The position numbers and the translations under genes were made by a program. A model generated the notes under the pieces. That model ran no database searches. It had not been told where the DNA came from and saw nothing but the letters and a program-made list of their open reading frames with translations. A DNA stretch of 62,915 bases, the filler included, from Platydemus manokwari (taxonomy: Eukaryota), in NCBI GenBank assembly GCA_037951405.1. It is 5 parts of 5 records of this genome, joined end to end, with 100 filler letters (N's around TTAATTAATTAA, not from the genome) between each part and the next. Parts side by side here need not be neighbours in the genome. Positions count along the whole stretch, not along the records: positions 1 to 16,274 come from JBBMOY011192543.1; 4 more parts are not named here. One strand, given 5' to 3'. This document shows positions 1 to 16,274 of the stretch, piece after piece. How positions within the stretch are numbered: position 1 is the first letter of the stretch; each line of letters starts with the position of its first letter.

Positions 1-786
1 ATACAGACACAAAATAAGATGTGGTTTTTTATTCGAATTAAATCTCGGAATTGTAATCCAATGTGATGAGTGATGAAATAGAGTGATTGAAAGGTGTCTT
101 AAACAAAACCAAAACCGCTTAATTTAAGGGTTCATGTATGGAAACAGATTGTTAAGATAGAATGCTTAATTAAATTAAATGTCGATTCTTGAATAATCTC
201 CTTAACTCTTTCATTCGGCTTTAACAATGGCAATAAAATTTCATTGGCATTGAAATGGTGTTCGACCAATTTCCAGATATGAACAAAATTATATTTATGT
301 TCGCAATTTGACATCTTTTTATCTTTTATATCATTGGTTGGCTATAAAATAGTTTTCATGGATACACATTGATCATCTCAATCATAAGAAAAATTGCCAA
401 TATCTAACCAGCTCAAATCAATATTTTGAGTGTATTCAAATGAAATATAATCATAAGTTTTTAATTATGTAGATTAATATAAGTTGAAGTGGAATTTATC
501 AGAACGGGAAATCTCGATTAGCTTATATCTCGATAAATAGACTGTCCGTAATTATACCGTTAATAAATATTATAATAATTCCATTATTTTTCCCTTTCAA
601 AATATTTATATATTCCAATTTTTAATAGTTTTTATTATATATTTTATCTATGTGATACTGTTGTTACGAAGATATCAATTTTGTTGCTTTTATCTATATT
701 TGATCATCTATGTCAACGTAAATATCAACGATGGCATTAGTGTTTGACATTAAAAATATACGATCAGTACAGCCTACATTATTTAC

Positions 787-984
787 ATGTCTTATATGGG
801 TGACAATTATTTTTGGCTTGTCCTCTTTTTATTGATCGTTATTTATTCGTTATCTGAACATGTGAATGGATTTCAGGGCGATTTCAAAAGGGCAAGTCTA
901 CCGGTCTATTTTCGATCAAAATCAGATATCAGTGAAGATATACTGCGTGCCAAAGCACCTTTATATCGATTGATGCCAGAATAA
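787..984 (+). CDS. Small secreted protein / candidate neuropeptide prohormone (65 aa, or first exon of a spliced gene)
   Basis: Hydrophobic signal-peptide-like stretch YFWLVLFLLIVIYSLS, plausible cleavage near VNG, then a dibasic KR and further basic sites (FRSK, RAK). More GC-rich than the flanks. A GC-type donor (AGG|GCAAGT) lies right after the KR codons at 891/892. Confidence 0.5.
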   Translation: MSYMGDNYFWLVLFLLIVIYSLSEHVNGFQGDFKRASLPVYFRSKSDISEDILRAKAPLYRLMPE

Positions 985-1681
985 GTAATATGCTAAGATG
1001 CATGCGTGTAGAATGCTAATATTTTTGTATATTAGTTTAACTAATTGTAGTATTTTTTGTGAAGCAGTGTTTAATACAACACATCTCGAGAACAGTTGTG
1101 TTGGTATATGCAGTGTTGAAAATGGTAGAAAGAAACATTTTTGCTTATAAAATATAGTTAAATCTATAATTTGATTCGTTTAATGTATTGAATGATTTCC
1201 AATTTATTTTGAATCTAGTTCGAATCCATAAATGATATTCTGATAAAATTTTGTGTGAAATTCTTATATTTTCCGTTCATTGATATTTTTGCAAGGAAAT
1301 TTTGGAAGAGTTAGCTTAGAACTGTTATCGCATTATTCCTGGAGTTTTCAGAATAATAGATTGTTTTAATATTATTTAGTAGAATATCAGGTGATAGAGA
1401 TTTAAAAATAATCACACATTAAAACTTTAAGCCATCCAATAAAAAAATACCAGACAATGTCTTTGATGAATTAAACGAGTGATGGAATCAGTAACAAAAT
1501 TACTTATAAACAGCATATTTGTCCTTAAGATCTTATTGTACAATCAATCTGTCATCGTTTGGACTTTGTGAAACTAATAATAGTTGAGTGAACGATTATT
1601 GATGGTGGTGCGAGTTGTGATATTATTTCTTTATTTTTACTATTTGTTTCAATAATAACTTGCATTCCTATTCGATCAACC

Positions 1682-1730
<49 letters not shown>
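1682..1730. repeat. (TAT)n microsatellite
   Basis: About 16 contiguous TAT units seen directly. Confidence 0.95.
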
Positions 1731-1736
<6 letters not shown>

Positions 1737-4700
1737 TATATGGGAACATATAAATATAAAATAAATAAATATCAAATTTCGTTTAGGAATGATTTTAGAA
1801 TAAACAAAAAAAATCGTTACATATTTTATCATCTACTTGCATTTGCAATTGGATACACACTGATTAAATTAATTTATTATTTTATTGGTTGCACATTTGT
1901 TTTATTGCATTTAAATCCAATAAAATACGAACGATCACATTCTCCGAAGTATACATCAAAGTTGTTTTAATAAAACTTAATTTGTAGAAATTTTCTTAGT
2001 AGTCTAACAGAACTTGTTGATCATACATTTTGTAATCACAATTCCATTCCATGAACAAATACTCCTGTTGGAATTATATCGTTAAATTGAATTTTTCTTT
2101 TAAATATCAAAAGAGATGGAAATTTTGTACCATTGGCATAACAGGTTAGAACTGTTGTATAGTGAGTCATTTTGTGGCCAGCGCTTTAAATTGAGGCCGT
2201 TTCAGACTCTCTGACAGCTACTGTCTTGTTCCATATATGGTCTGGTTGAAAACGAGTTGTCTATTTGTCCTCATAGACACTATAAAGGTTAGACCTCGGA
2301 AGGTTTCAACTTTACATATTAAAACCAAGACGATTTTTTGAGCCAAAAATTTGGTAAATTAGTGCGTCTTGTATGTCATCAAATACGGTAACGCTATGAA
2401 GAATGGTTGTACTCTTATAAATCTTTGATAACAATGAATTTTATTATAGCATTTGGAAACTCTAGATCGAATTAAAACATCATTTATTGTTTAGTTAATC
2501 TATGGAACATTATTCTTCTAGTCGTGATCTTGTTTCTTTTAGCTATGTTTTATTCATTTTTATATTTTCCGATTGTGCTCGGCTTAATTTATGCAGTAGT
2601 GGTCGACTATTATATGCCGACTGAACCATATTTGTAATAGAATATTTCAATAAGTCACCTAACTTACATTTACTGTAAATTGTAGATTGTTTTGAATTTT
2701 TTAAGGGAAAAATTTGTATTAAATAGATTTTCCTTGTAAGTTGTGCGGCATGTGGATGCACACAAGAGGATACCAGGTGCGCACAGTTGTAAAATGACTG
2801 TGCACACAAAAGGAAAACGTCAGTGCGCAAAAGTTTCTTACTGAGAACAAAGTACTGGCTCAATGTTCAAAACTTGGTTTAAATATCTGTTTTGAAAATG
2901 GGAGTTAATTTCTTTAGCAACGAAAAAAATTATTTAAGTATGGTTTTATGATTGTTGAAAACAAGGGCTACTTAAATCCGTGATAATCTTGCGTGGTGTT
3001 TTAAACTGCCCTTTCGTCTTTCAGCGTGTTTGATCTGTATTGTAGGCAAAATTTTATGCACATGGCACCAAGGATATTTATTTACTTAAAGTTGTGGATT
3101 TTCAGAAAGGTTGAATAATGACTTGAAACTTGCAAGACTAGTTTTATAAAAGTAGTGTAATATTAGCATCTGGCTTTTGTGTTTATATGAAAAAAAATTC
3201 ATTTGGGCATTGAAAATTTGAAAATCGTAACAGCTAAGTTCATCAACAAGGAAGATTTTGTTTTCAGTGTTCTTTCAGGAAGAATATTAGGGATTTAAAG
3301 ATTATCTATATTTAAAGGTTGTTTATCTGAGAAAAATTATCTGGAATTTGTAAATATTCGGTCTTTCTTACAGCACCAGAACGAGTTATAAGAGAACAGT
3401 ACAATAATTTCAAATTTTTTTGCTCATAGGGAACATTGGTTTGAAAGTGAATGTGTATCTGGATGTGGGGATTGGTCATTATGAAAATCCAAAACCCATA
3501 TCCATTTCCTAATGCAGTGTCTAACTTCAACATTAATGAACAATGAGCATGAAGCCGATTCGAATCAATTGCGGATTCAAAAAAAATATTCATGTTGACT
3601 TGATCCTTACATCTAATAGACTTTGTGCTCTTCGTGATTTTAATATTGCATCCAGTCTGCTAGCAGTTTAGAATATTACGCTACTTTGAACGATGAAATA
3701 ATTATGATTATTATGTTATGTTTGTCATTTGCATTTTTATAAAATTTTATCAAATCAATTGAACTTATCCGTGTAAATTTTGTGACAATTTTGGTAGCTT
3801 CAATCATAGTTATCAATCAATTTTGATTGATAAAGATGAGAGGAAAACTTATGAATGTTTTAATCAATCCTAACGCAGTATAATTATTCCAATAAACAAG
3901 GACAAAATCATTGAATAATAATGAAATAATTAAAATAATTTTTACCATAGCTATATCCTTTATATAAATACAATCAGAATAATTCAAAAAACGGTATAGA
4001 TATTCCAGTCATTCTGACAGCCACATTTCTAGTTCGCCTGGACACTGGGAACAAGTGAAACAGGGACTACTTTTACAATGACTACATGTATTTTGATACA
4101 ACGATTTGGTAGCAATAAATCAAATCATTTTGTAATAATTTTTGACAACGACTATAAATTGACGAAAAATTTGACAGCATTAAAACATTGACTTTAAGTC
4201 ATCATGTCGATTATTTATACTATTTAATTGATGCTTTGAAAGGGAGAACTAGTATTGTTATTCTACTCTTGTTATGTTATTTATGAATAAATAAATGTTA
4301 ATCAATCTGTGAGTGTTGTGAATAAATAATTGTGAAGTTGTGATGAGTTTAGTTTTAATTTTCCGAATTTTATTCTAAACCTAATTTTATTGATGTTGAT
4401 TGGAGGATATATCAAAGCGCAATTAAAATTTTGGATAATATCTTGAAAATCAATACAAACATATATTTTCTATTATATATCTGGATTTATATTTTATTTA
4501 CACTATCAGAATTTTCCTTTATATATATTTTGTTATTAGTGACCATGATAATTTTTCATGAATTTTTAATTTGTATTTAATAATAATATTATATGAAACA
4601 TGTTTTATTGATTCGTTTCATACTTTTTGTTTGTTTATCTGCAGTAATATTGCCGGTGAGGGTTGCGCGAACGAATAAATTAAAACTTTATTAGAATTCA

Positions 4701-4789
4701 AACATAATTTCGTTATTTATATTTCTTCATTCATTATGTTCTTACTATTTATTTTTTTCTTTCTTTTTTAGAGATTTCATGTGGGATGA

Positions 4790-4790
4790 A

Positions 4791-4822
<32 letters not shown>
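4790..4822. repeat. (AT)n(GT)n compound microsatellite
   Basis: atatatatatatatatgtgtgtgtgtgtgtgt seen directly. Confidence 0.9.
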
Positions 4823-7800
4823 ATTATCATCACTTTATTTAAAACTCCATATGTAAAGTTTAATACTAGCCAATTGAATCTTCGGATTTTTTTATCCACA
4901 TACCATTTTAAAAATGTTTGTTGAAGCACTTAATTTTCACTAAAGTTTGAAAGCATTTTATTGAAAATCTTATTAATAATTTTAACTGAATTGATCATTT
5001 TCATTTTACAGATCATGTTTTTCATTAGATTATTATCATCACTTTAATTATATTTCTTATCATTATTGCTATAAAGATACTAGATCTAAATATTGATATA
5101 TTGAAAATAAAATCTTTAATCCAATATTTATCATAATATATTTTTAATCCGTTATTTTAATTGGTTTTATAAATTTAATAATTATTAATTGACATTATAT
5201 CGAAAGATTATATTATAATTAATTTCGCTGATTTGATGGTTATGAAAATGCTATGTTAAGTATTTAGTTTATATTTAATATTAGCATTGCTGAGCATGGA
5301 TTTTGATGGTGATCATTGCAAATGAAGTTGTTATATCATATTAATATGGATAAAATGTCTTGAATACGGGAATGAGATTAATCTAGATATTGGTTTCATT
5401 GATATTTAATTGTATTTTATCATTTTCAGAATCCAAAACGAAACCAAAACCATCAACCTATCACTCGGTCCAAAACCTTTTCGAACTGATTTTATCAATC
5501 TTACGAATCTCAATCACGATATATTTAAAATTACTTTTCTACTTTCAATATCCATTTTCAAATGTTTTATTTTGATATTTTGTGCTTTGAACTGCAAACA
5601 TTAATCATTTCTGTTGATCTATGATTTGCACAAAAGTCAATCAGATATTGGTAATCGATCAGATTTGACAACATTAAATTGATTTTGCGGCTGTTTTGTA
5701 AAATTAAAATTTGTTTAATATTATTTTATCGAATACATTTTTTAGTGTTTGCCTCAAAGCAATTCCAAGAAAATTTTATGGAAAAATAATTTTAAGAAGT
5801 TCATTAATGGGTTTTGAGGTCATGTTAAAAATATGTTTCGTATTATTTGTATTAAAGGAATAATTGATTAAGCTTTACGATTCGTTAGCATTTTCACTCA
5901 TTATCAGATTGTGTAATCAATTTTTGAATTTTCACATGAGGACTCTTAATTTTTAAAATAATTGTTAAAATGTGACCTTGGATCACAATTAAAAGAACAA
6001 AGCATTTAATTTTAAATATACGATTTTCAAAGTATTATTTTATGATTCTAATGTGTTCAACGATCTTATTTGAAGCAAATATTGTATTATTTCTAAATTT
6101 AAAACAATGTTAAATAATTATGATGTAATTTTAATTTCTGAAAACAAATGATAGATTTGTTTCTATATTATAATAGATGGGAAACTTTATTAATATTTGA
6201 TTTTTAAATAAAATGTTTTATTTTACTTTTAGTTTTAAAATATCAATCTAAATAATAAAAATTTTCATGTAACAGAGTATATTTTAATTCAATGATTATA
6301 AAACTCTAAGAATTTCTTTACTTTTCAGATCAATTAATTTCTATGTTATATTTTTAGTTTTACCGACTAATTGAATTATAATTTGTAAATTTTGCTGCAT
6401 AAAGTTTTCAAAAATATTTTTATATATTTAAACATTCTTACTCAACTTAAAATTTTAAATTTCAGTCTTAATTTAATGAATTTGATATTATTTCACTTTG
6501 AGTGAAACAAAACATAGTATGTATTAATGAATTTTCTGACAAGAATTGATTCAACAAGAAATGGGTTAACGAAAGTGGCATAGAATATATGCAAATAATG
6601 CAGTTTATAGCTAAATAGACACCGAATTAAAACAATATGAAATGATAATCTTTATTTCATTACAACAATAAATTTAAAGCACGGAACCTATTTAAAAGGG
6701 GTAGCCTAGTGGCCTACTAACTTTGACATCCTAAAACATGAAAAAGGTGTTGTAAAATAAAATATTTCCAACGTACTTATTATATTATAAATTTAAACAA
6801 AGATTTTATGAAATTTTATCTAATGTTTTTCAATTATTTATACTAGTTGATAATATGAACTTTATATAATTATTATAATTAATTATAATATAATTGCTAT
6901 TTTTAATTAATTATCGCAGCTCAATCTGTAATTCTTTATGAATTGAATTTCTTTAAGTTTTCGTGCCCCAATGGGGTTTGTCTTAAAAATCCGTCAAAAT
7001 TTATTCCCTGTCAGCGCTTTATAATCCCATTGGGTTTTTAATTACTTGATGAATTGGTCTATAAATTAATATATAAGCAGATAGATACTTTTTAAATTTC
7101 TTTAGTCCTATTTGTCTCTGGTTCGAGGTGATGATTCGGCCCATGGAAGGCCGAAATAGGAATACTTTCAGTTTATTTTGTATTTACTTATTTTTATTTT
7201 GACCACTTAACAATACCGAAAATGTCATGCAAACCTGAAATTTAAGTAAGTCACAAAAAGAAAGGTCGTACAATAAAATAGATGAGGACAAAGAAGAAAT
7301 TTCCTATCATGTAGACACCAACTTCAATGACTGTTCCAAAGTGGACTAAATACGAAGATGGTGAAGAAAGCCCGCAAAGCTCAGAATCCATATTAGGGAC
7401 TTCATTGAGACTCGAAATAATGACTCAATCTCGGTTGATGTCAAATACTTGAATTTCTTCTCCTTTGAAATAAATAATGTTTTTTATAAAAAAATCTAAA
7501 TTCTATTGGTCATTTAATTAGAAATTTACGAAATTTACAAAATATTTTGATTATGATTAATATGATGATTATTTATTTTTCTCTATTATTATCAATAGAC
7601 GTAGAAATATAATTTTAAAAAGTATTAAAGACTATAAACCAGAAACATTTATTTATACATATTATTATAGATTATTTATTATTTTAATTATCATTATTAA
7701 TTATTATCGCTAATTACTTAATATTACTATTATTTTTATTTGCGGTTATGGTTTTTATTTATTATCAAATGATGATTTATTAACTTGAAAATAATTTAAG

Positions 7801-10019
7801 CTAAATGGTAAAAAAAATAGTAAAGCGTTTAATTACAAAGGTCACTAAGCAAAAATAACTGAAAACATCACTATTGATGTCAAAAAAAATTTTTGGAAAA
7901 ATTACAAGCCTAAATTCACCAAAAGCATTGTGATGGTTTTCATTTATTAGCAGTTTTTCATTAATTTTAGCAGTTGATGAGTTCTCTTTTTTAATATAGG
8001 TATCTGTTTTATTGGTATTAAAGTTTATTGTTAGAGTGGTATTGATGTTATGACTTTACTAGTCCTACAGAGCTTCGGTACAATTTATGGTGGCGGTGCT
8101 ACCTAGAAAATTTAGCTGAATTATCTAAGGGTTTAAAGTTTTATGAATTGATGGTGCAACAATGAATTTTTAGTACTGATGTTTAGCAAATTAGTTTAGT
8201 ACTGAATGTACACAATAATCAATAAATGTTTTTATTATATTACATTATTTCGATGATGAAAAGTTTAAATTTAATATTAATATCATTCATTTAATAAATC
8301 CGAAAGGTTTACAAGATCTAAAAGATGACAACATGTTAGCACACGTCTCAATCAGATAAGTGCTCAATATCCACACGATAGACATTAATAAAGCTAAAAT
8401 TTAATAGTATTACTAAATGATGCTATAATTTAACTTTAATAGTGCTGAAACTAAAAGCTAAAATGGTACTCAAATGAAATGAGGATTTTCTCTGCAAACA
8501 ATTATCTTTTCAGTAGAATTAAAAATCTTATCTTAAAATCAATCCCTATCTTCTAAAATTCAGATTCTTTCGAAATCTGTCTTCTGGAAATCTTCGCACT
8601 CTAGTAGATTTAAATTTGTTAAATGTGGGCGCATACCATAGACTTCTTTCTTTTTATATACTATTTTGCTTGATATGTGGTAGTATCGTTTATTATGTCT
8701 TTGTTAACAAGAAATTTCCTCAATATCTACATTGTATTTTTCGTTTTACATTTTTTACTATCAGACTTCTATCTTTATTTGTCCATAAACTCCATCAATT
8801 TTATTCTATTCACAATTCTGTCGTTTGAGTTATATTTTTCCTAGTTTGGATTATTTTTTATTTTTTTTTATTTTCCATGTTTTTTTATTTAAGCTCACAT
8901 AATTATTATTCTATTATTTATTTTATTGTTGGATTATTATTAATAATACAATTCCATCTTTTTCAATAATTTGTTTGCTATTCTACTTACTTATTTTACG
9001 TTTATTTACTGATTTCATTAATATCATTTTATTTTCAATATTATTTGACATTATTACAAAATGTTCTTCATGTTAATCAATATTACTTTAATTTTTCGAC
9101 ATCGGTTTAGCTTCATCATTTAAAAATTAATAAGACACTTATGAATGAGAAATTAAATGAATATCATCATTAATGAAATATTATAATTAAATAAGAATAA
9201 ATTGAAGCACAACATAATACTTATAAGTCAAAATGACAAAAGCTTACCTGTTAATAATGTTTTAAGTTGATCTCTTAACACAATAAATGATAAAAGTTTA
9301 GTTGTTAATTATTTGATTGGATTACTGTGTAAACCTTCTGGAAATGCTGGGGCAGTGAAGTTAATGCTGAGCTAATTAAATCGTATTCCATTATTGGAGC
9401 TGTTGTTCCGGTTGTTGTATAGGATTAAGATCAGAATTGGCCAATTTTATGATTAGATGTTTAAGAATGCTATTAGTTTGGGATAGAATATTGTTTGGAT
9501 GCTTATTGGAATGTGATAATGTTTAAAATATTGCTAATGCGCTAATTTTTGGTGTATGCTCCCACAAAATTTAAGACCATTTTTCTAGGCCTATACAAAA
9601 TTAGGTCAAAGATTTAAATACGCAATTTTTATGATGTACTTTAGTGCTTATATTACTGTTTATGGTAATATTCATAATAATTATAACTATTATATTTGAT
9701 TATTATTTTTAATAGTATAACATTAAGCTTGGTTCTAGAAAATTACAAAAATTAATAAATATTGTTGTCTCAGGAGATAATTTTGTTTCACCATCGCAAA
9801 TTAATATCAAGAGCTTACTCTATTTTGAGTCATTACCACTGTGGTTTACCCTTATTGATTGTTGTTATTCAGAAATACATGTATTTAAATAATTTTAAGT
9901 TTTTCCTTAGTGATAGCCTAGTGTTATGGATTAAGCCCATCATTTAATCCTATAAATAATATTTATTCATTTTCATTTATGTACATGGTTCTTTTAATGA
10001 TTGATTATTTTATTTGCAG

Positions 10020-10124
10020 TCCGGTGATGGCGACACTGGATCGGACATTGATGAGTCGTTGAAAAAGAACTCAGGAAAGTCCTACGAACGATGGTACGAT
10101 AGTGCTGCCAATGACATTGGCTGA
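10020..10124 (+). CDS. Orphan terminal coding exon (SGDGDTGSDIDESLKKNSGKSYERWYDSAANDIG*)
   Basis: Strong acceptor ttttatttgcag|, open in phase 0 to TGA at 10122-10124. 51 of 105 bases are G/C against a very AT-rich flank. Confidence 0.55.
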   Translation, partial: SGDGDTGSDIDESLKKNSGKSYERWYDSAANDIG

Positions 10125-11226
10125 ATAATTCGACGGAAAATATTGAAGAAAAGATATATTGAAAGAAATCTTGTGAATGATTAATAAGCAAAGATTAATA
10201 TTGTCTTTTACAAGCCTAGACGATATCAGTCCAAGATTTTTGCTAAATGATATTTATAATAATTATTATATTAAATTTTTTGTATCGATAAAACAAGATT
10301 TTCACGTTATCAATGAAGTATTCACTGCATTATTTTCATTTTTATTGTCTGAGTTAAAATTGTGTGAATGAATATATATATATCATTAATAGATCAATAT
10401 ATTACGTGATTTAATTTCACTGGATTATATAATTGCGAATATCGAAAAAGTTCCACAGAGCATCGAATCAGAATATATGGAATATTTGATTACCATATAT
10501 ACTTCAGTTGAAGACACAGTGTATAGACCGAAACACTGAGAAGCTCAAATTAGGAAGATGAAACTATAAAAAACCTAACAATTTTTCAAAGTCGGTGTGA
10601 GAGATTTTCCTACCGCTCCGTGAAGGTCTTATTTATATTGAGTGATAATAATTATTTTCTATCTGCAGTCCATATTCAATAACCCTATTTTAAATCACAA
10701 GAGTTAGTTATTTATGTTCTAACTGACAAAATGATATCACTCTGTTGGGCTTTTATATTTATTTAAATATTATAAAAACACAAAAAATTTTAATCACATT
10801 TTAGTGATGTAATATTTTATTTTATCAATTTTTTATTTTGTCTTATTTTTTCAGCTTTCCAAATATATCTAAATCTTTGATAAATAATTTATCTGAAAAA
10901 TACATCACAATAGTTTTTTGAATAATCGTTTTGTGTTTACGGTTAATGGGATCAATTCTAGATTGGAAAAATATAACCTTCTGGAACTTTTATTGCTTTC
11001 TTTTTTCTTGTTCGAGTTCAAATAAAAATTGTTTTAGAATTTTGTTCAGAAAAATTTAATTATATTGATAATATATTTCTTATAAATAAAACTGAGGAGT
11101 AATAGTAATAATCAGTTGTATACAAAATAATATGATAGTCATATATGATTTGATTCCAATTATTTAAGTACTATTTATAAGAATCGATCAATAATTCAAT
11201 AACTATATTATTTTTCTGATGATGCT

Positions 11227-12183
11227 ATGGGAAATTGTTTCTTTTGCTACAAGCCTATTAATATCAGCGAAAGTCGTACTGAGTCCTCTGAAGTTTCGGG
11301 GAAGAATTTTTTTGACAAAATGATGATTAAAGTACCCATCAGAAGGCAAACAACCAAATCTGTATCTAATGAAAAATCAACTACATCATCAGCCTCTGTT
11401 CCATTACCATTACCATATTCTCCGAGAAATTTTGCCGCTTCACCAGCAGAAAGGGAACGAAAAATTGATAACCAAATAATATCCAATTTTAAAGTTGGAA
11501 TGATCAAGAAAGACGATCGTTACACACTAACATTCTGGATGCCAGAATCGAAGATGTCAATGCAAGACTTCGTTGAAATACATAATATTCCACTTTACGA
11601 ATTACGTGATCCACATTCTTTCCGAATATACTGTGTCGGTCTAAAGTGGCACAACAGCGCTGAAAAATTCTATAACATTTGGGAAAGTATGAAGGGCGTC
11701 CGATCACGGATTACTAATGCCACTTTAAGTAAATTTGATATAAAAATCAATATTTCTGACTGTTTTCACGCAAGTAATGGCAACTATTGCCGTGCTTATC
11801 AGTTTATTGGTAAAGATAAAGCAAATTTACAACGGGCTTTTGCATGGTTCAGTAGTACTTTAAGGCCGACCGAGGCCAAGTATCTTGAACAGCATCACAG
11901 CAACTGGTTTTCAAAAGATTTATACGGTGATAAACAAAGATATCTCGATGAGTTTTTTCCAATGAAAACAGATGCTTGTGGAGATGTAATTGATCCATTA
12001 ACGGATGAAAAATTGAAAATATTGATATCTCAAACACAAAACCAACGTAATCTGTTAACCAATCAAAACAACAATAATAACACGACTATTGGGACAATTC
12101 GAACAAAAGATTATTCTCAATTAAATAACAATATCAATGCATATTTGAAAGACATCATTTATTCATTTTTATCCTACTTTTAA
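11227..12183 (+). CDS. Intronless 318-aa protein of unknown function with N-terminal myristoylation/palmitoylation-type motif
   Basis: 957-nt ORF in DNA where chance ORFs rarely exceed 100 aa. MGNCFFC start, Ser/Thr/Pro linker, globular-looking core and Asn-rich tail. Confidence 0.75.
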   Translation: MGNCFFCYKPINISESRTESSEVSGKNFFDKMMIKVPIRRQTTKSVSNEKSTTSSASVPLPLPYSPRNFAASPAERERKIDNQIISNFKVGMIKKDDRYTLTFWMPESKMSMQDFVEIHNIPLYELRDPHSFRIYCVGLKWHNSAEKFYNIWESMKGVRSRITNATLSKFDIKINISDCFHASNGNYCRAYQFIGKDKANLQRAFAWFSSTLRPTEAKYLEQHHSNWFSKDLYGDKQRYLDEFFPMKTDACGDVIDPLTDEKLKILISQTQNQRNLLTNQNNNNNTTIGTIRTKDYSQLNNNINAYLKDIIYSFLSYF

Positions 12184-14341
12184 ACTCGACTACACAAGTT
12201 TCATGCGAACAATTATGAATGATTTTGAAATCAACTTGAAAACCTTTCGAGTACAAACGAAAATTAAATTCCAAAACGAACTTTCACAAAACAGAAATGA
12301 TTTTCATTTTTAACAATTACTATTTTAGTGATTTAAAGATTTTTATTCTTTGATTTAATTCACTGGTGATGGTGAGTATAAACAATTATTAAACCAAATG
12401 GACTATTTGAAAAGTATTATCACAAGGTACTGGTTTCTAATCTATACATGGCTATAGATTCAATAGTTTTAAAATTATATAATTCATTGTAGAATGATTT
12501 AATCATTGAAACATTATCTTTTGATAATTTACTTATTATTAAACAATTTGAATCCTGGTTTTCATTTTGATATGAAGAATCATGATGACTCATTAAAGGT
12601 TTGACTTTTTGTGAAACCTGTTCTAAGTTTTTATCTATGTTAGAGAGGCTGTAACTACAACTTCTCCAGGAAGCTTCTAATTTTCCAATTAATATACAAT
12701 CGAAAACTTTGTAAAAGTCAACTACTTAAACTGTCTTATTTCTTGAGGAAATTCAATGAACTTTAAAAAGTTATATTATAAACCCATGTCTCGACGATAC
12801 ACGTTGAAATGTAAATAAAATTCAACTTATTTGGTTGTTTAATCTTAAAGTAAGTAAAAGAAATTTTAACTAAGGAAATATTTGGGAAATATACCAATGA
12901 ATATGTAATAAGAAAGAAATAAATAGTAAGAATATTAAACTGAAACCCTTGGTGAAGAAAGTAAACATTAAAGCCAATGAAATGATTGTAACGTGGTGAG
13001 TAGACTAATGTTGCATTGGATTAATCCTATTTGTTGATGTATGTATTACGAGGTTATTTATTTAAATTGTAGATCTAACAAAAAGTGTTCCTCAATGTAT
13101 ACAAGGGGTGAAACTAAATTATTAAGCATGTTACGAGTTAGTTTAACATTCATCTAATTTAATGACTATGGTACATGAATCAAGAAAAGCTTTTGCATGA
13201 GAGGAAGATAAGCTAAAATTCCGCCAGTTACCATTTTATATATTTTTCTTATTTTCAAAAAATCAAAACTCTGTTCTTTAAAAATTAGCTTATAGCTTGC
13301 TGAGATCCATTCGGTTGAATTTTTCGTTTCTCTTATATTGATGCAAGCACTTGTATTTGATAAATATGGTACATAGTTATTGTTGATCAAATCCTGACGG
13401 ATAAGTACTGTTATTTACTCATTGAATACATAGCTATAACCGTTTGAGCAATATATTTGACCACTTATGCTGGTTTACGCGCTGAGATAATTAATAGATT
13501 CATCTGGTGGTATTATTGCATCATAAAATTGTAATAGCTTTTTAAAACTTTGGCGACTCTTTTATAGTAAGCTTTTTATTAAGGTCATATTTATTATTAT
13601 TATTCTAATTTTTTATTCTTGCGTATGTCACTTATTATTTATAAATATTAAGTTTAGCACCCACACTACTCAGTTCCTAACGTGGCTCGTTCTCTTAGTC
13701 TGGCTCCTCTCTAGTTTGTATAAGCCATTAAGATAACATTAAGCAAGTTATATTTAAAAGTTATAACGCTGATAAATACAAGGACAAACCCATTAGACAA
13801 TATTTGTGTTTGTCAAATTATTAATTTGTTCCAGTAGTTGTGTTTCCATCACAGAATCAATTTCTGCCTACTAGGGCGACACTCTGTGCGCATGCGGCTA
13901 CTCGACAATTACTATTTATACATTCAGTACGATTATATGCATTGGAACCATTACATTTACGCTAGTACGTCACGTTTATAAAATATTTTAACTTTTTAAA
14001 GAAAATCTAAAGAATCCAAATAATGAAATTCACAAAATAAAGTATTGTGTAACACGAACAACATGAAGGGTGAAAAATTTGTCAGAAATTTATGTTAAAA
14101 GATTAACATAAAGAATAAATAATCAAGACAATATCAAATTTAACGTGACACAAGGATCAAACCATTTTGGATCAATAATAATCTATTTTTAAAATTTATA
14201 AATCAAACTCTCTAAGGTCATAGTTAAGTTCTTGCGATTTCACCAAGTTAACTGAACTTATTGTTACAAACCTGTAGTTTCTTTTGAAGTGTGACAATTT
14301 AATATTGAATAAAAATTTAAGAGTCATTCTTGTTAGTTAAT

Positions 14342-14459
14342 TAAAGAACTTTTATATAAATAACAGAACATAAGTTAATATTTAAAAACTTAAGTTGAGC
14401 TTCGCAAAATCTTTTAACACCTAAAACTAAAGAACTTTTATATAAATAACAGAACATAA
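14342..14459. repeat. 32-bp exact direct repeat (two copies)
   Basis: taaagaacttttatataaataacagaacataa at 14342-14373 and 14428-14459. Confidence 0.9.
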
Positions 14460-15070
14460 ATTTTCCATGTTGCCGCTAGTTCACTTATTAATTTATAAAA
14501 CTTCAAGATTTATCAGCATTTCGCAAATTAATTCTCACAACTATATCCATTTCTTATTCGGAATTTCAATTTCCTATGGTTTACTGCATACCCTACTGGT
14601 CACCTCAGTTTTAGAAAGTGCAGCTCTTTCTCCTTTTTCTTTAAATATTTATAAAATATTTATCACCTCTTGATCATCTCCAAGCTTTTTTTCCGTGGAA
14701 TTGGAGGTATTGTCCTTGACACTAGTCTCCTAACAGTATAGTGTGGTATAATTTAACCTCTCGACTAAATTATGATAGTTTATATGACAAATTTAGTATC
14801 GCAGCTTTAAATAACAGCAAGCAAATTAAAAATAAAATAAATTAGAATCGCAGAAAAACAAAGTTGAGTTAAATATTTAAATTAATTAAAATTTGATAAT
14901 TAAAATCTAATAACAGTAAAAAATTCAATTACAATAATTGAGAAAGAAGTTTATTTCATCATTAAAAAAAGATTTTTTATGTGTATATAGTTCTGTTGAA
15001 TTACTGAAAAGCATTTTTGTTTTAAAATACAATATTGTTCGAATCATTTACACATATTAAATTAAATTAT

Positions 15071-15500
15071 ATGTCGCTTAATCTTAGAAGAAGGAAAACA
15101 GGTTGAAAATTTATAATTATTTTTCCTATTAAACATTATTTTCTAGACGCTTTGAAATGTATGCTTAATTTCAATACACCAATAACCAAAGTAATCAACT
15201 TTGAGAAATTGTGGAAAGTATGATTTTAAAATTTCTTTTTCAATTTTCTTTTTGATTTTGAAATTCAATAAATCAGGTTTTAATTTGTGATAAGCATGGT
15301 TTGGATATAATTGCAACTCTTTTCACACAGAAAGGTTTGAGAGATCTTGGAGTTACTCTTACATTGTTAGTATTAGATGACTTATATGACACAATTTATT
15401 TATTGATAGGAATATTAATTCAGAACGGGAACCGTTGCCAGATGTTCCGTGTATTTATTTTGTCCTACCAACAAATGACAACATTACCAAAATTTGCAAA
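15071..15500 (+). CDS. SCFD1: Sec1-family protein SCFD1/Sly1, 5' exons (truncated by contig end)
   Basis: Exons 15071-15101, 15147-15217, 15277-15365, 15410-15500 with GT-AG introns and consistent phases give MSLNLRRRKTDALKCMLNFNTPITKVINFEKLWKVLICDKHGLDIIATLFTQKGLRDLGVTLTLNINSEREPLPDVPCIYFVLPTNDNITKICK. This matches the Sly1 N-terminal motifs (MLNFN..WKVLIYD..G.DII..LRD.G.TL..R.P.PDVP..YF..PT..NI). Confidence 0.92.
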
Positions 15501-16274
15501 GTATTTATTTAAAGTTAATTTTTAAAAATTAATCAAATAATTGCAACGAAATAAATTTGATATAATTAAATTATTTTTGATTTAGAAGTTTGATTTTGAT
15601 TTTTTGCTTTTTTTATTAATAATCTTGACTTATCGTTTATGAAATGTAAAATGTTTTGATATTATGTAATTGTGTAACTTTGATCTTAGCATTGGGCAAA
15701 GCAAACAGCTTGGGGATTGTTTGGTGTTTATTATACTGATTATTTCATGTTTTGAGTAAAATAACTTTTCAATATTGGTTAATTAGTCAATAATTATCAA
15801 TGAGTTTCCTAGGTCAAATTTGATTTATTATCCTGAATACTAGCATATTTATAATTATCCCCAAACAATCACTCTAGAAACCACCATTAATGGGTGATAT
15901 TTAAAGTACAAACCTATGACAAGAAACTTTCAACAAAACTAAGAATGTTTATTATGTCACCATCAATTGTCGAAAATTAATCATTATTTTTATAAGTTAT
16001 AAGGGTTTATTTACTTGAATCTTCGTCAAATACACCCTGGAATACACTGATATATTGGTTTTATAGTACTTTCTAGGATATTTGATAATTTGTCACTCAC
16101 ATTTGCTATCATTTACTGGTTGTATGTATGAGTTGTAATTGAATTTTGTCTTCACATTATATTCTTGCAATAATTATAAAAATAATATCATTATCCATAT
16201 TATTAATAGAGATTAATATTAATATTATTATAGATCGAATATATTGCTAATGAACCTGTTTATGATTACGTGGA

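What the first reader, a model, noticed from the sequence alone, without database searches (positions are those of the whole stretch)
787..10124. Candidate unannotated neuropeptide prohormone: signal-peptide exon plus distant exon ending in Gly-stop, joinable by a GC-AG intron
Seen: ORF 787 has a signal peptide and FQGDF-KR, with GCAAGT immediately after the R codon. An isolated GC-rich exon at 10020-10124 on the same contig is in the same phase (0). Joining them gives SP-FQGDF-KR-SGDGDTGSDIDESL-KK-NSGKSYERWYDSAANDI-G*. Established: dibasic sites, an acidic spacer and a terminal Gly are the hallmarks of prohormone-convertase processing and PAM amidation. Inference: the predicted 17-aa amide starts NSG and ends NDI-amide, echoing the ends and length of PDF/PDH/cerebrin peptides (NSELINS...NDA-amide), although the middle is dissimilar. 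The unspliced read-through would give a different peptide set (ASLPVYF...), so one locus might yield two precursors.
Basis: partly seen in the sequence, partly recalled or inferred. Interest (0 to 1): 0.72.

Follow-up and report, generated by a model that had tools for sequence, protein, structure and literature searches.

The report
Possible planarian peptide-hormone gene, unproven
A flatworm contig holds what looks like the last exon of a small secreted, amidated-peptide precursor and two competing signal-peptide first exons, but there is no RNA, peptide or cross-species evidence, so it remains an ordinary unconfirmed gene prediction.

Summary
ORF 787-984 starts with a signal-peptide-like stretch, FQGDF-KR is followed at once by GCAAGT (892), and 10020-10124 lies between a strong acceptor (ttatttgcag) and a Gly-stop. 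That piece is the most GC-rich and most coding-like stretch of the contig.

It is 4593-4655 (MKHVLLIRFILFVCLSAVILP), with a canonical phase-0 donor CCG|GTGAGG. This is the best-ranked donor-like site upstream of 10020, and it also joins in frame.

"Signal-peptide ORF plus strong phase-0 donor" is very rare in control DNA of this genome. It occurred 0 times in 319 kb and about 0.003 times per 10 kb in simulations, so two of them upstream of this exon is unlikely to be chance.

My best reading is a small orphan prohormone whose peptide exon is 10020-10124. I favour the GT-AG first exon.

The PDF/cerebrin resemblance is not supported. No homologue, paralogue, RNA run or published peptide was found. 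The genome is a triclad-type flatworm (eye53-type genes, flatworm mitochondrial code), but not S. mediterranea.

The parts
787..891 (+). Candidate first exon 1a: ATG, signal-peptide-like stretch (h-region FWLVLFLLIVIY, c-region SLS|E or VNG|F), then FQGDF-KR
   Evidence: Single copy in the genome.
892..897 (+). GC-type donor-like site AGG|GCAAGT, phase 0
   Evidence: Ranks 3rd of 672 GT/GC sites upstream of 10020 even with a 3-bit penalty for GC. Use in splicing not shown.
892..984 (+). Read-through tail ASLPVYFRSKSDISEDILRAKAPLYRLMPE plus stop. GC 0.387, falling to 0.27 after the stop
   Evidence: KR-ASLPVYF weakly recalls eye53 peptides (KR-LSVPTYF...) but lacks their D-[DEN]-W-E core.
4593..4655 (+). 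Rival first exon 1b: MKHVLLIRFILFVCLSAVILP (basic n-region, hydrophobic core)
   Evidence: Single copy. GC 0.286 against 0.15 upstream.
4656..4661 (+). Canonical GT donor CCG|GTGAGG, phase 0. Best-ranked donor-like site upstream of 10020
2727..3429 (.). Interspersed repeat inside the putative intron of model A (>40 scored copies, 77-89% identical). Other repeats lie at about 7020-7215, 8019-8377, 8510-9010 and 10524-10658
10005..10019 (+). Acceptor: T-rich tract and CAG (ttattttatttgcag), the only AG within the open frame before the exon
   Evidence: Resembles proven acceptors of this genome's eye53-like genes.
10020..10124 (+). Terminal coding exon: acidic spacer SGDGDTGSDIDESL (10020-10061), KK (10062-10067), NSGKSYERWYDSAANDI (10068-10118), Gly (10119-10121), TGA (10122-10124)
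   Evidence: Single copy.
10270..10275 (+). ATTAAA, a possible poly(A) signal 146 nt after the stop (common by chance in AT-rich DNA)

Best explanation
The + strand of this flatworm contig most likely carries a small orphan peptide-hormone (neuropeptide-type) precursor gene. Its last exon, 10020-10124, encodes an acidic spacer, a Lys-Lys cleavage site and a 17-residue peptide ending in Gly-stop. A prohormone convertase, a carboxypeptidase and the amidating enzyme would turn this into NSGKSYERWYDSAANDI-amide (monoisotopic mass 1973.887).

The signal peptide comes from an upstream first exon spliced in phase 0. The favoured one is 4593-4655 (MKHVLLIRFILFVCLSAVILP), through a canonical GT-AG intron of 5364 nt. 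Otherwise ORF 787-984 is a separate unspliced unit.

Shown: the sequence features, their rarity in control DNA, and the presence of convertase and amidating-enzyme-type genes in the genome. Inferred: transcription, both junctions, secretion, cleavage, amidation and any neural role.
For: Exon 2:
- It is the sharpest GC island of the contig, 0.23|0.486|0.26.
- It is the top coding-like open window (15.3 bits, G at codon position 1 = 0.44).
- In 319 kb of control strand, only about 5 clusters reach its score.
- It is bounded exactly by a strong acceptor and a stop.
- Only one frame is open, so it needs a phase-0 upstream exon.

First exons:
- Of 672 GT/GC sites upstream on that strand, ranks 1 and 3 (4656 and 892) both sit in phase 0 directly after ATG-initiated signal-peptide-like ORFs.
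- That combination was found 0 times in 319 kb of control strand. In simulations it was found 4 times in 12 Mb, and 2 (GT type) plus 1 (GC type) times in 8 Mb.
- None was found on the window's minus strand.
- No phase 0-0 internal exon candidate lies between them and exon 2.

Context:
- All three exons are single copy and outside the repeats.
- The genome encodes Cu2_monoox_C (PHM/DBH-type) and proprotein-convertase P domains.
- It has bona fide eye53-type prohormone genes whose splice sites look like these.
Against: - No RNA evidence. The one run that holds the stretch is of unknown kind and covers intron as well as exon, so it is probably DNA.
- No homologue in 5.8 billion clustered or 1.84 billion representative proteins. 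These collections do not seem to hold this organism at all, because the 318-aa neighbouring ORF does not even find itself.
- No paralogue in the genome.
- Absent from the 51 S. mediterranea prohormones and MS peptide tables and from full-text papers.
- The signal-peptide test is a home-made heuristic, the donor matrix is generic, and the thresholds were chosen after the fact.
- Exon 1b has an Arg inside its hydrophobic stretch and a poor -3/-1 cleavage context. Exon 1a has an acidic n-region.
- KK is a weaker convertase site than KR or RR.
Confidence: 0.5

Rival explanations
1. One reading: 787-891 spliced to 10020-10124 through a 9128-nt GC-AG intron, with 4593-4655 a chance look-alike.
For: AGG|GCAAGT has the perfect intron-side consensus that GC donors typically need, sits in phase 0 right after KR, and follows the better c-region (SLS|E) of the two signal peptides. 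A GC-type hit of this quality occurred once in 8 Mb of simulation and never in 319 kb of control.
Against: GC donors are about 1% of metazoan introns (established knowledge). A canonical, higher-ranked GT donor after another signal-peptide ORF lies 5.4 kb nearer to the acceptor and is just as improbable by chance. The GC island of ORF 787 continues to the stop at 984 instead of ending at 892.
Confidence: 0.1
2. ORF 787-984 is its own unspliced unit, a 65-residue secreted pre-protein (SP, FQGDF-KR, 30-residue tail), and GCAAGT is coincidental. This is compatible with 4593-4655 + 10020-10124 being a separate neighbouring gene.
For: GC content rises through the tail (0.333 then 0.387) and drops to 0.27 only after the stop at 984. 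KR-ASLPVYF recalls the start of eye53 peptides, KR-LSVPTYF, in S. mediterranea and in this genome. A weak hit on C364341 (E=0.44) aligns across the putative donor (F..A.LPV.F.S...ISE).
Against: The tail shows no frame preference on the codon-position model, and a second frame is also open there. It lacks the D-[DEN]-W-E core of eye53 peptides. The C364341 similarity is not significant and is weak at the DNA level. A 76-codon open frame is not unusual here: about 3 are expected by a rough count of my own, and 6 were seen.
Confidence: 0.3
3. 10020-10124 is the last exon of an ordinary, non-secreted gene whose upstream exons lie off the contig (before position 1) or were not recognised. The two signal-peptide ORFs are unrelated to it.
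For: An acidic Ser/Asp-rich C-terminal tail is common in many proteins. A terminal Gly and a KK are weak signals on their own. The contig starts only 10 kb upstream, and long introns are plausible in this genome.
Against: It requires two independently rare signal-peptide-plus-phase-0-donor sites on the right strand and in the right phase to be coincidence. No other phase-compatible exon was found in 892-10019.
Confidence: 0.2
4. Nothing here is a gene. An AT-rich genome yields hydrophobic ORFs and occasional GC-rich open stretches by chance.
For: About 6 signal-peptide-like ORFs occur per 16 kb by chance. A 39-codon open frame is unremarkable. There is no expression or conservation evidence of any kind.
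Against: Several things coincide: the sharpest GC island, a strong acceptor, a stop, codon periodicity, and two phase-matched strong donors after signal-peptide ORFs.
Confidence: 0.12

Closest known systems
Orphan planarian prohormones of S. mediterranea (npp/spp genes, 'miscellaneous amidated peptides'; Collins et al. 2010, PMC2953531)
   Same: A very short precursor (55-69 residues predicted) with a signal peptide, an acidic spacer, KK/KR sites and a Gly amidation donor. The sequence is lineage-restricted with no relatives outside flatworms. KK sites are used in known planarian precursors such as 1020HH.
   Different: No sequence match to any of the 51 listed precursors or the MS peptide tables. 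No cDNA, MS or in situ evidence. It comes from another species: two S. mediterranea primer sequences are absent from this genome.
eye53 prohormone family (Smed-eye53-1/-2, and eye53-like genes of this genome on C1224933 and C1595376)
   Same: The read-through of ORF 787 has KR-ASLPVYF, compared with KR-LSVPTYF / KR-LTVPTYF. The eye53-like genes show that prohormone exons of this genome end at basic sites with AAAAG|GT-type donors.
   Different: The defining core P-T-Y-[FW]-D-[DEN]-W-E is absent from both the tail and exon 2. The pattern search hit only the other two contigs. eye53 peptides are not amidated.
PDF / PDH / cerebrin peptides
   Same: Length of 17-18 residues, N-terminal Asn-Ser, an acidic residue near the C-terminus, and C-terminal amidation (Ile-amide as in cerebrin, from my own knowledge).
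   Different: The middle of the peptide has no similarity. No Pfam match at E<=10. A charged, Trp/Tyr-rich core replaces the Leu/Ile-rich helix. [quoted passage not shown]

Membership tests
Peptide-hormone / neuropeptide precursor (generic class) | N-terminal signal peptide | tested here: inconclusive
   Two candidate first exons pass a home-made hydrophobic-core test. No SignalP was available, and the joined proteins were not submitted to any tool.
Peptide-hormone / neuropeptide precursor (generic class) | Basic cleavage sites flanking the peptide, and a C-terminal Gly as amide donor | tested here: met
   KK at 10062-10067 and Gly-stop at 10119-10124. KR at 886-891 in exon 1a.
Peptide-hormone / neuropeptide precursor (generic class) | Processing machinery present in the organism | tested here: met
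   Cu2_monoox_C (15 exon matches) and proprotein-convertase P domain (9 matches) in the genome. Some short GC-rich contigs may come from prey DNA.
Peptide-hormone / neuropeptide precursor (generic class) | Transcribed and spliced as proposed, and expressed in neurons or secretory cells | not testable with these tools
Peptide-hormone / neuropeptide precursor (generic class) | Peptide conserved in related species or detected by mass spectrometry | tested here: inconclusive
   No hit in the protein collections, the metagenome scan, papers or S. mediterranea tables. No triclad genome or transcriptome was available to the tools.
PDF / PDH / cerebrin | Match to the family profile (NSE-L-INS-LL-x-LP core, about 18 residues, amidated) | tested here: not met
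   No Pfam family at E<=10 for exon 2. Only the end residues agree.
eye53 family | Repeated P-T-Y-[FW]-D-[DEN]-W-E peptides between basic sites | tested here: not met
   The back-translated pattern hits C1224933 and C1595376 only. The window has P-V-Y-F-R-S.
GC-AG intron | Donor with strong consensus (AG|GCAAGT) paired with a normal AG acceptor | tested here: met
   AGG|GCAAGT at 892 and ttatttgcag| at 10019. Sequence only.
GC-AG intron | The junction is actually used | not testable with these tools
   No RNA data.

The most novel reading that the evidence does not exclude
NSGKSYERWYDSAANDI-amide is a real, highly diverged PDF/cerebrin-type peptide of a freshwater triclad. It would be made from a gene with two alternative signal-peptide first exons, one of them removed through a GC-AG intron. 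That would place PDF-type signalling in a group where ancestral peptides have largely not been recovered. A more modest version is a new orphan amidated planarian neuropeptide with alternative first exons; I put that at about 0.3.
Probability: 0.03. Interest if true: 0.7.

Novelty: new member of a known kind. Interest (0 to 1): 0.3.

Why it matters
If it is transcribed as proposed, it adds one more lineage-restricted amidated peptide to the planarian peptide repertoire. It would also be an example of a tiny prohormone gene with two alternative signal-peptide exons, one using a rare GC-AG intron. Such short, fast-evolving precursors are missed by homology-based annotation, so a sequence-only route to them has some methodological value. 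As it stands, it is an unconfirmed prediction in an unnamed, fragmented and prey-contaminated assembly.

Tried and rejected
Searches for relatives that found nothing:
- Word-index protein search with ORF 787-981: no candidate.
- phmmer of exon 2 against 1.84 billion representatives: nothing.
- The 318-aa neighbouring ORF: no homologue and not even itself, so the collections lack this organism and the blanks mean little.
- Pfam on all pieces and on ten other open frames: nothing.
- ESM Atlas look-alikes: no usable hit.
- Metagenome scan with ORF 787-981: nothing; exon 2 was too short for that tool.
- Full-text paper searches for peptide strings: only irrelevant word matches.
- Substring searches of the Collins 2010 supplements: no match.

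RNA evidence:
- One holder of unknown kind, probably DNA and possibly the source sample.
Searches used 1-6800 and 6950-16274.

Gene-structure checks:
- A second peptide exon for 787-891 between 892 and 4592, and phase 0-0 internal exons: none convincing.
- 7315-7452 is open and has an acceptor, but it has no prohormone features and no phase-compatible donor.
- Duplication between the two first-exon regions: none.
- The bacterial promoter/terminator scan is irrelevant here.
- C364341 as a paralogue of ORF 787: not significant.

Other:
- Species test: two S. mediterranea primers and a 1020HH back-translated pattern are absent.
- One script call was lost.
- The joined (spliced) proteins were deliberately not typed or submitted to any tool. 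Each exon was searched by reference only.


Full report
**The observation**

The window is G000:C1192543:1-16274, a 27% GC contig of a 911-Mb assembly in 1.99 million contigs.
- ORF 787-984 reads MSYMGDNYFWLVLFLLIVIYSLSEHVNGFQGDFKR, then ASLPVYFRSKSDISEDILRAKAPLYRLMPE and a stop.
- GCAAGT starts at 892, right after the Arg codon.
- 10020-10124 follows ttattttatttgcag and reads SGDGDTGSDIDESLKKNSGKSYERWYDSAANDIG-stop.
- Only that frame is open, so the acceptor is phase 0 and any partner exon must end in phase 0.

**Is 10020-10124 an exon?**

- It is the sharpest GC island of the contig: 0.486, against 0.23 and 0.26 in the flanking 100 nt and a mean of 0.267.
- On a crude codon-position model trained on the neighbouring 318-codon ORF, it is the top open 34-codon window of both strands. 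It scores 15.3 bits in frame against 9.1 and 2.0 in the other frames, with G at codon position 1 = 0.44.
- In 319 kb of control strand from the same genome, only about 5 clusters reach its score, several of them clearly real coding or transposon ORFs.
- Its limits coincide exactly with a strong acceptor and a stop codon.
- It is single copy and outside the repeats that fill much of the contig.

I take it as a probable terminal coding exon (about 0.75).

**Which first exon?**

A signal-peptide-like ORF alone means little in this AT-rich DNA. A simple hydrophobic-core test finds about six in the contig.

I ranked all 672 GT/GC sites upstream of 10020 on the + strand with a generic metazoan donor matrix (from my own knowledge) and a 3-bit penalty for GC.
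- Rank 1 is 4656, CCG|GTGAGG.
- Rank 3 is 892, AGG|GCAAGT.
- Both lie in phase 0 directly after ATG-initiated signal-peptide-like ORFs.

It joins in frame to 10020 through a canonical GT-AG intron of 5364 nt.

The combination "signal-peptide ORF plus phase-0 donor of this strength" is very rare.

| Sequence tested | Hits |
|---|---|
| 319 kb of control strand, same genome | 0 |
| 12 Mb simulated, order-4 Markov model of this genome | 4 |
| 8 Mb simulated | 2 GT type, 1 GC type |
| Window minus strand | 0 |

That is about 0.001-0.003 per 10 kb. The thresholds were set after the fact. Even so, two such sites on the right strand and in the right phase within the 10 kb upstream of a probable phase-0 terminal exon are unlikely to be coincidence.

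No phase 0-0 internal exon candidate, and no convincing second peptide exon, lies between them. Both first exons are single copy.

**Weighing the two models**

GC donors are about 1% of metazoan introns (established knowledge). A GT donor of equal rarity sits 5.4 kb nearer to the acceptor.

GC donors are enriched among alternatively used sites, and a perfect GCAAGT exactly after KR is hard to dismiss. I give about 0.35 that 891/10020 is used at all, as an alternative first exon, and about 0.55-0.6 that 4655/10020 is used.

Against splicing at 892, the GC island of ORF 787 continues through the tail (0.333, then 0.387) and ends at the stop codon (0.27 afterwards). This fits an unspliced 65-residue unit. 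The tail shows no frame preference, however, and a second frame is open there too.

Neither signal peptide is textbook. Exon 1a has an acidic n-region but a canonical SLS|E site. Exon 1b has a basic n-region but an Arg inside the hydrophobic stretch and a poor -3/-1 context.

**The organism**

- The assembly holds several intact mitochondrial COX1 genes.
- One (C1440324) uses AAA at invariant Asn positions and ATA at Ile. This is the flatworm mitochondrial code.
- Others use the general invertebrate code and look like snails and a crustacean. They are presumably prey or contaminants.
- A back-translated P-T-Y-[FW]-D-D-W-E pattern found eye53-type prohormone exons on two contigs, with none in the reversed-pattern control. 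They read KR-LSVPTYFDEWET-KRR, KK-LVYPTYFDNWEPN-KR and KR-LTVPTYFDDWEN-KKR. These are nearly the S. mediterranea eye53-1 peptides.
- So the main organism is a triclad-type planarian, but not S. mediterranea.
- The window belongs to it. It has the same GC as the eye53 contigs. It also shares repeat families with contigs that in turn share repeats with a nuclear contig carrying a flatworm-code COX1 pseudogene.
- The genome also has PHM/DBH-type and proprotein-convertase domains.
- The eye53-like genes give proven local splice sites (AAG|GTAAGA, GAG|GTACGA, tttatag|, tttcag|; 61-nt intron). The candidate sites resemble them.

**Comparison with known families**

- PDF/cerebrin: the likeness is about four end residues, and no Pfam family matches at E<=10. 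I do not file it there.
- eye53: KR-ASLPVYF in the read-through recalls the start of eye53 peptides. The D-[DEN]-W-E core is absent, so this is not membership either.
- S. mediterranea: nothing in the 51 prohormones or MS tables matches.
- The closest known kind is the set of short, lineage-restricted 'miscellaneous amidated peptide' precursors of planarians (PMC2953531).

**What could not be done**

- No RNA run holds the stretch.
- The protein collections do not appear to contain this organism, so their blanks say little.
- No triclad genome or transcriptome was within reach.
- The spliced proteins were not typed or submitted anywhere. Exons were searched one by one, by reference.

**Verdict**

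Interest is modest until a junction read or a peptide ion is seen.

Noticed in passing
G000 contigs C1440324, C1514745, C1389203, C1344449, C43481 (L032-L036): The assembly holds at least five different intact mitochondrial COX1 genes. One uses the flatworm code (AAA=Asn, ATA=Ile). Three use the invertebrate code and look snail-like; the two compared in full (C1514745, C1389203) are 85% identical in protein. One looks crustacean-like. The 'genome' is therefore a wild flatworm plus prey or contaminant DNA, and short GC-rich contigs (0.50-0.55) with PHM-like exons probably belong to other organisms.
   Followed up: partly
L044 (C1224933) 1350-1540; L046 (C1595376) 256-318: eye53-type prohormone genes of this species. 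Each peptide copy sits on its own exon of about 57-66 nt. The introns are in phase 2 inside the basic cleavage site (AAAAG|GTAAGA, AAGAG|GTACGA, AGGAG|GTACAC), and one intron is only 61 nt long. The signal-peptide exon was not found within the fetched DNA.
   Followed up: partly
window 11227-12183 (+): An uninterrupted 318-codon ORF (326 open codons) starting MGNCFFC, which is a possible N-myristoylation/palmitoylation start, with an Asn-rich tail. It is very unlikely to be open by chance at 27% GC. It has no Pfam family, no homologue and no Atlas look-alike, so it is probably a lineage-restricted single-exon gene 1.1 kb downstream of the candidate exon.
   Followed up: partly
window 2727-3429; about 7020-7215; 8019-8377; 8510-9010; 10524-10658; 14132-14435: Interspersed repeat families. 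The first has more than 40 scored copies at 77-89% identity, out of 535 first-look candidates for that query. None carries a recognisable protein domain.
   Followed up: partly
window 998-1150 (+): A 50-codon ORF directly after ORF 787-984 with a hydrophobic start and six Cys (MHACRMLIFLYISLTNCSIFCEAV...). It may be chance; it was not tested.
   Followed up: no
L003 (C364341) 107-235 (-): A 253-nt contig with a weak protein-level likeness to ORF 787 that runs across the putative GC donor (F..A.LPV.F.S...ISE; E=0.44, one in-frame TGA). DNA similarity is poor. It is a lead only.
   Followed up: partly
L040 (C1120441) 1501-2364: A degraded nuclear copy of the flatworm-type COX1 (6 TGA, 3 TAG, 2 TAA in frame) on a contig that shares repeats with the window's repeat-bearing neighbours. 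It helps to tie these AT-rich contigs to the flatworm.
   Followed up: partly
   Followed up: no
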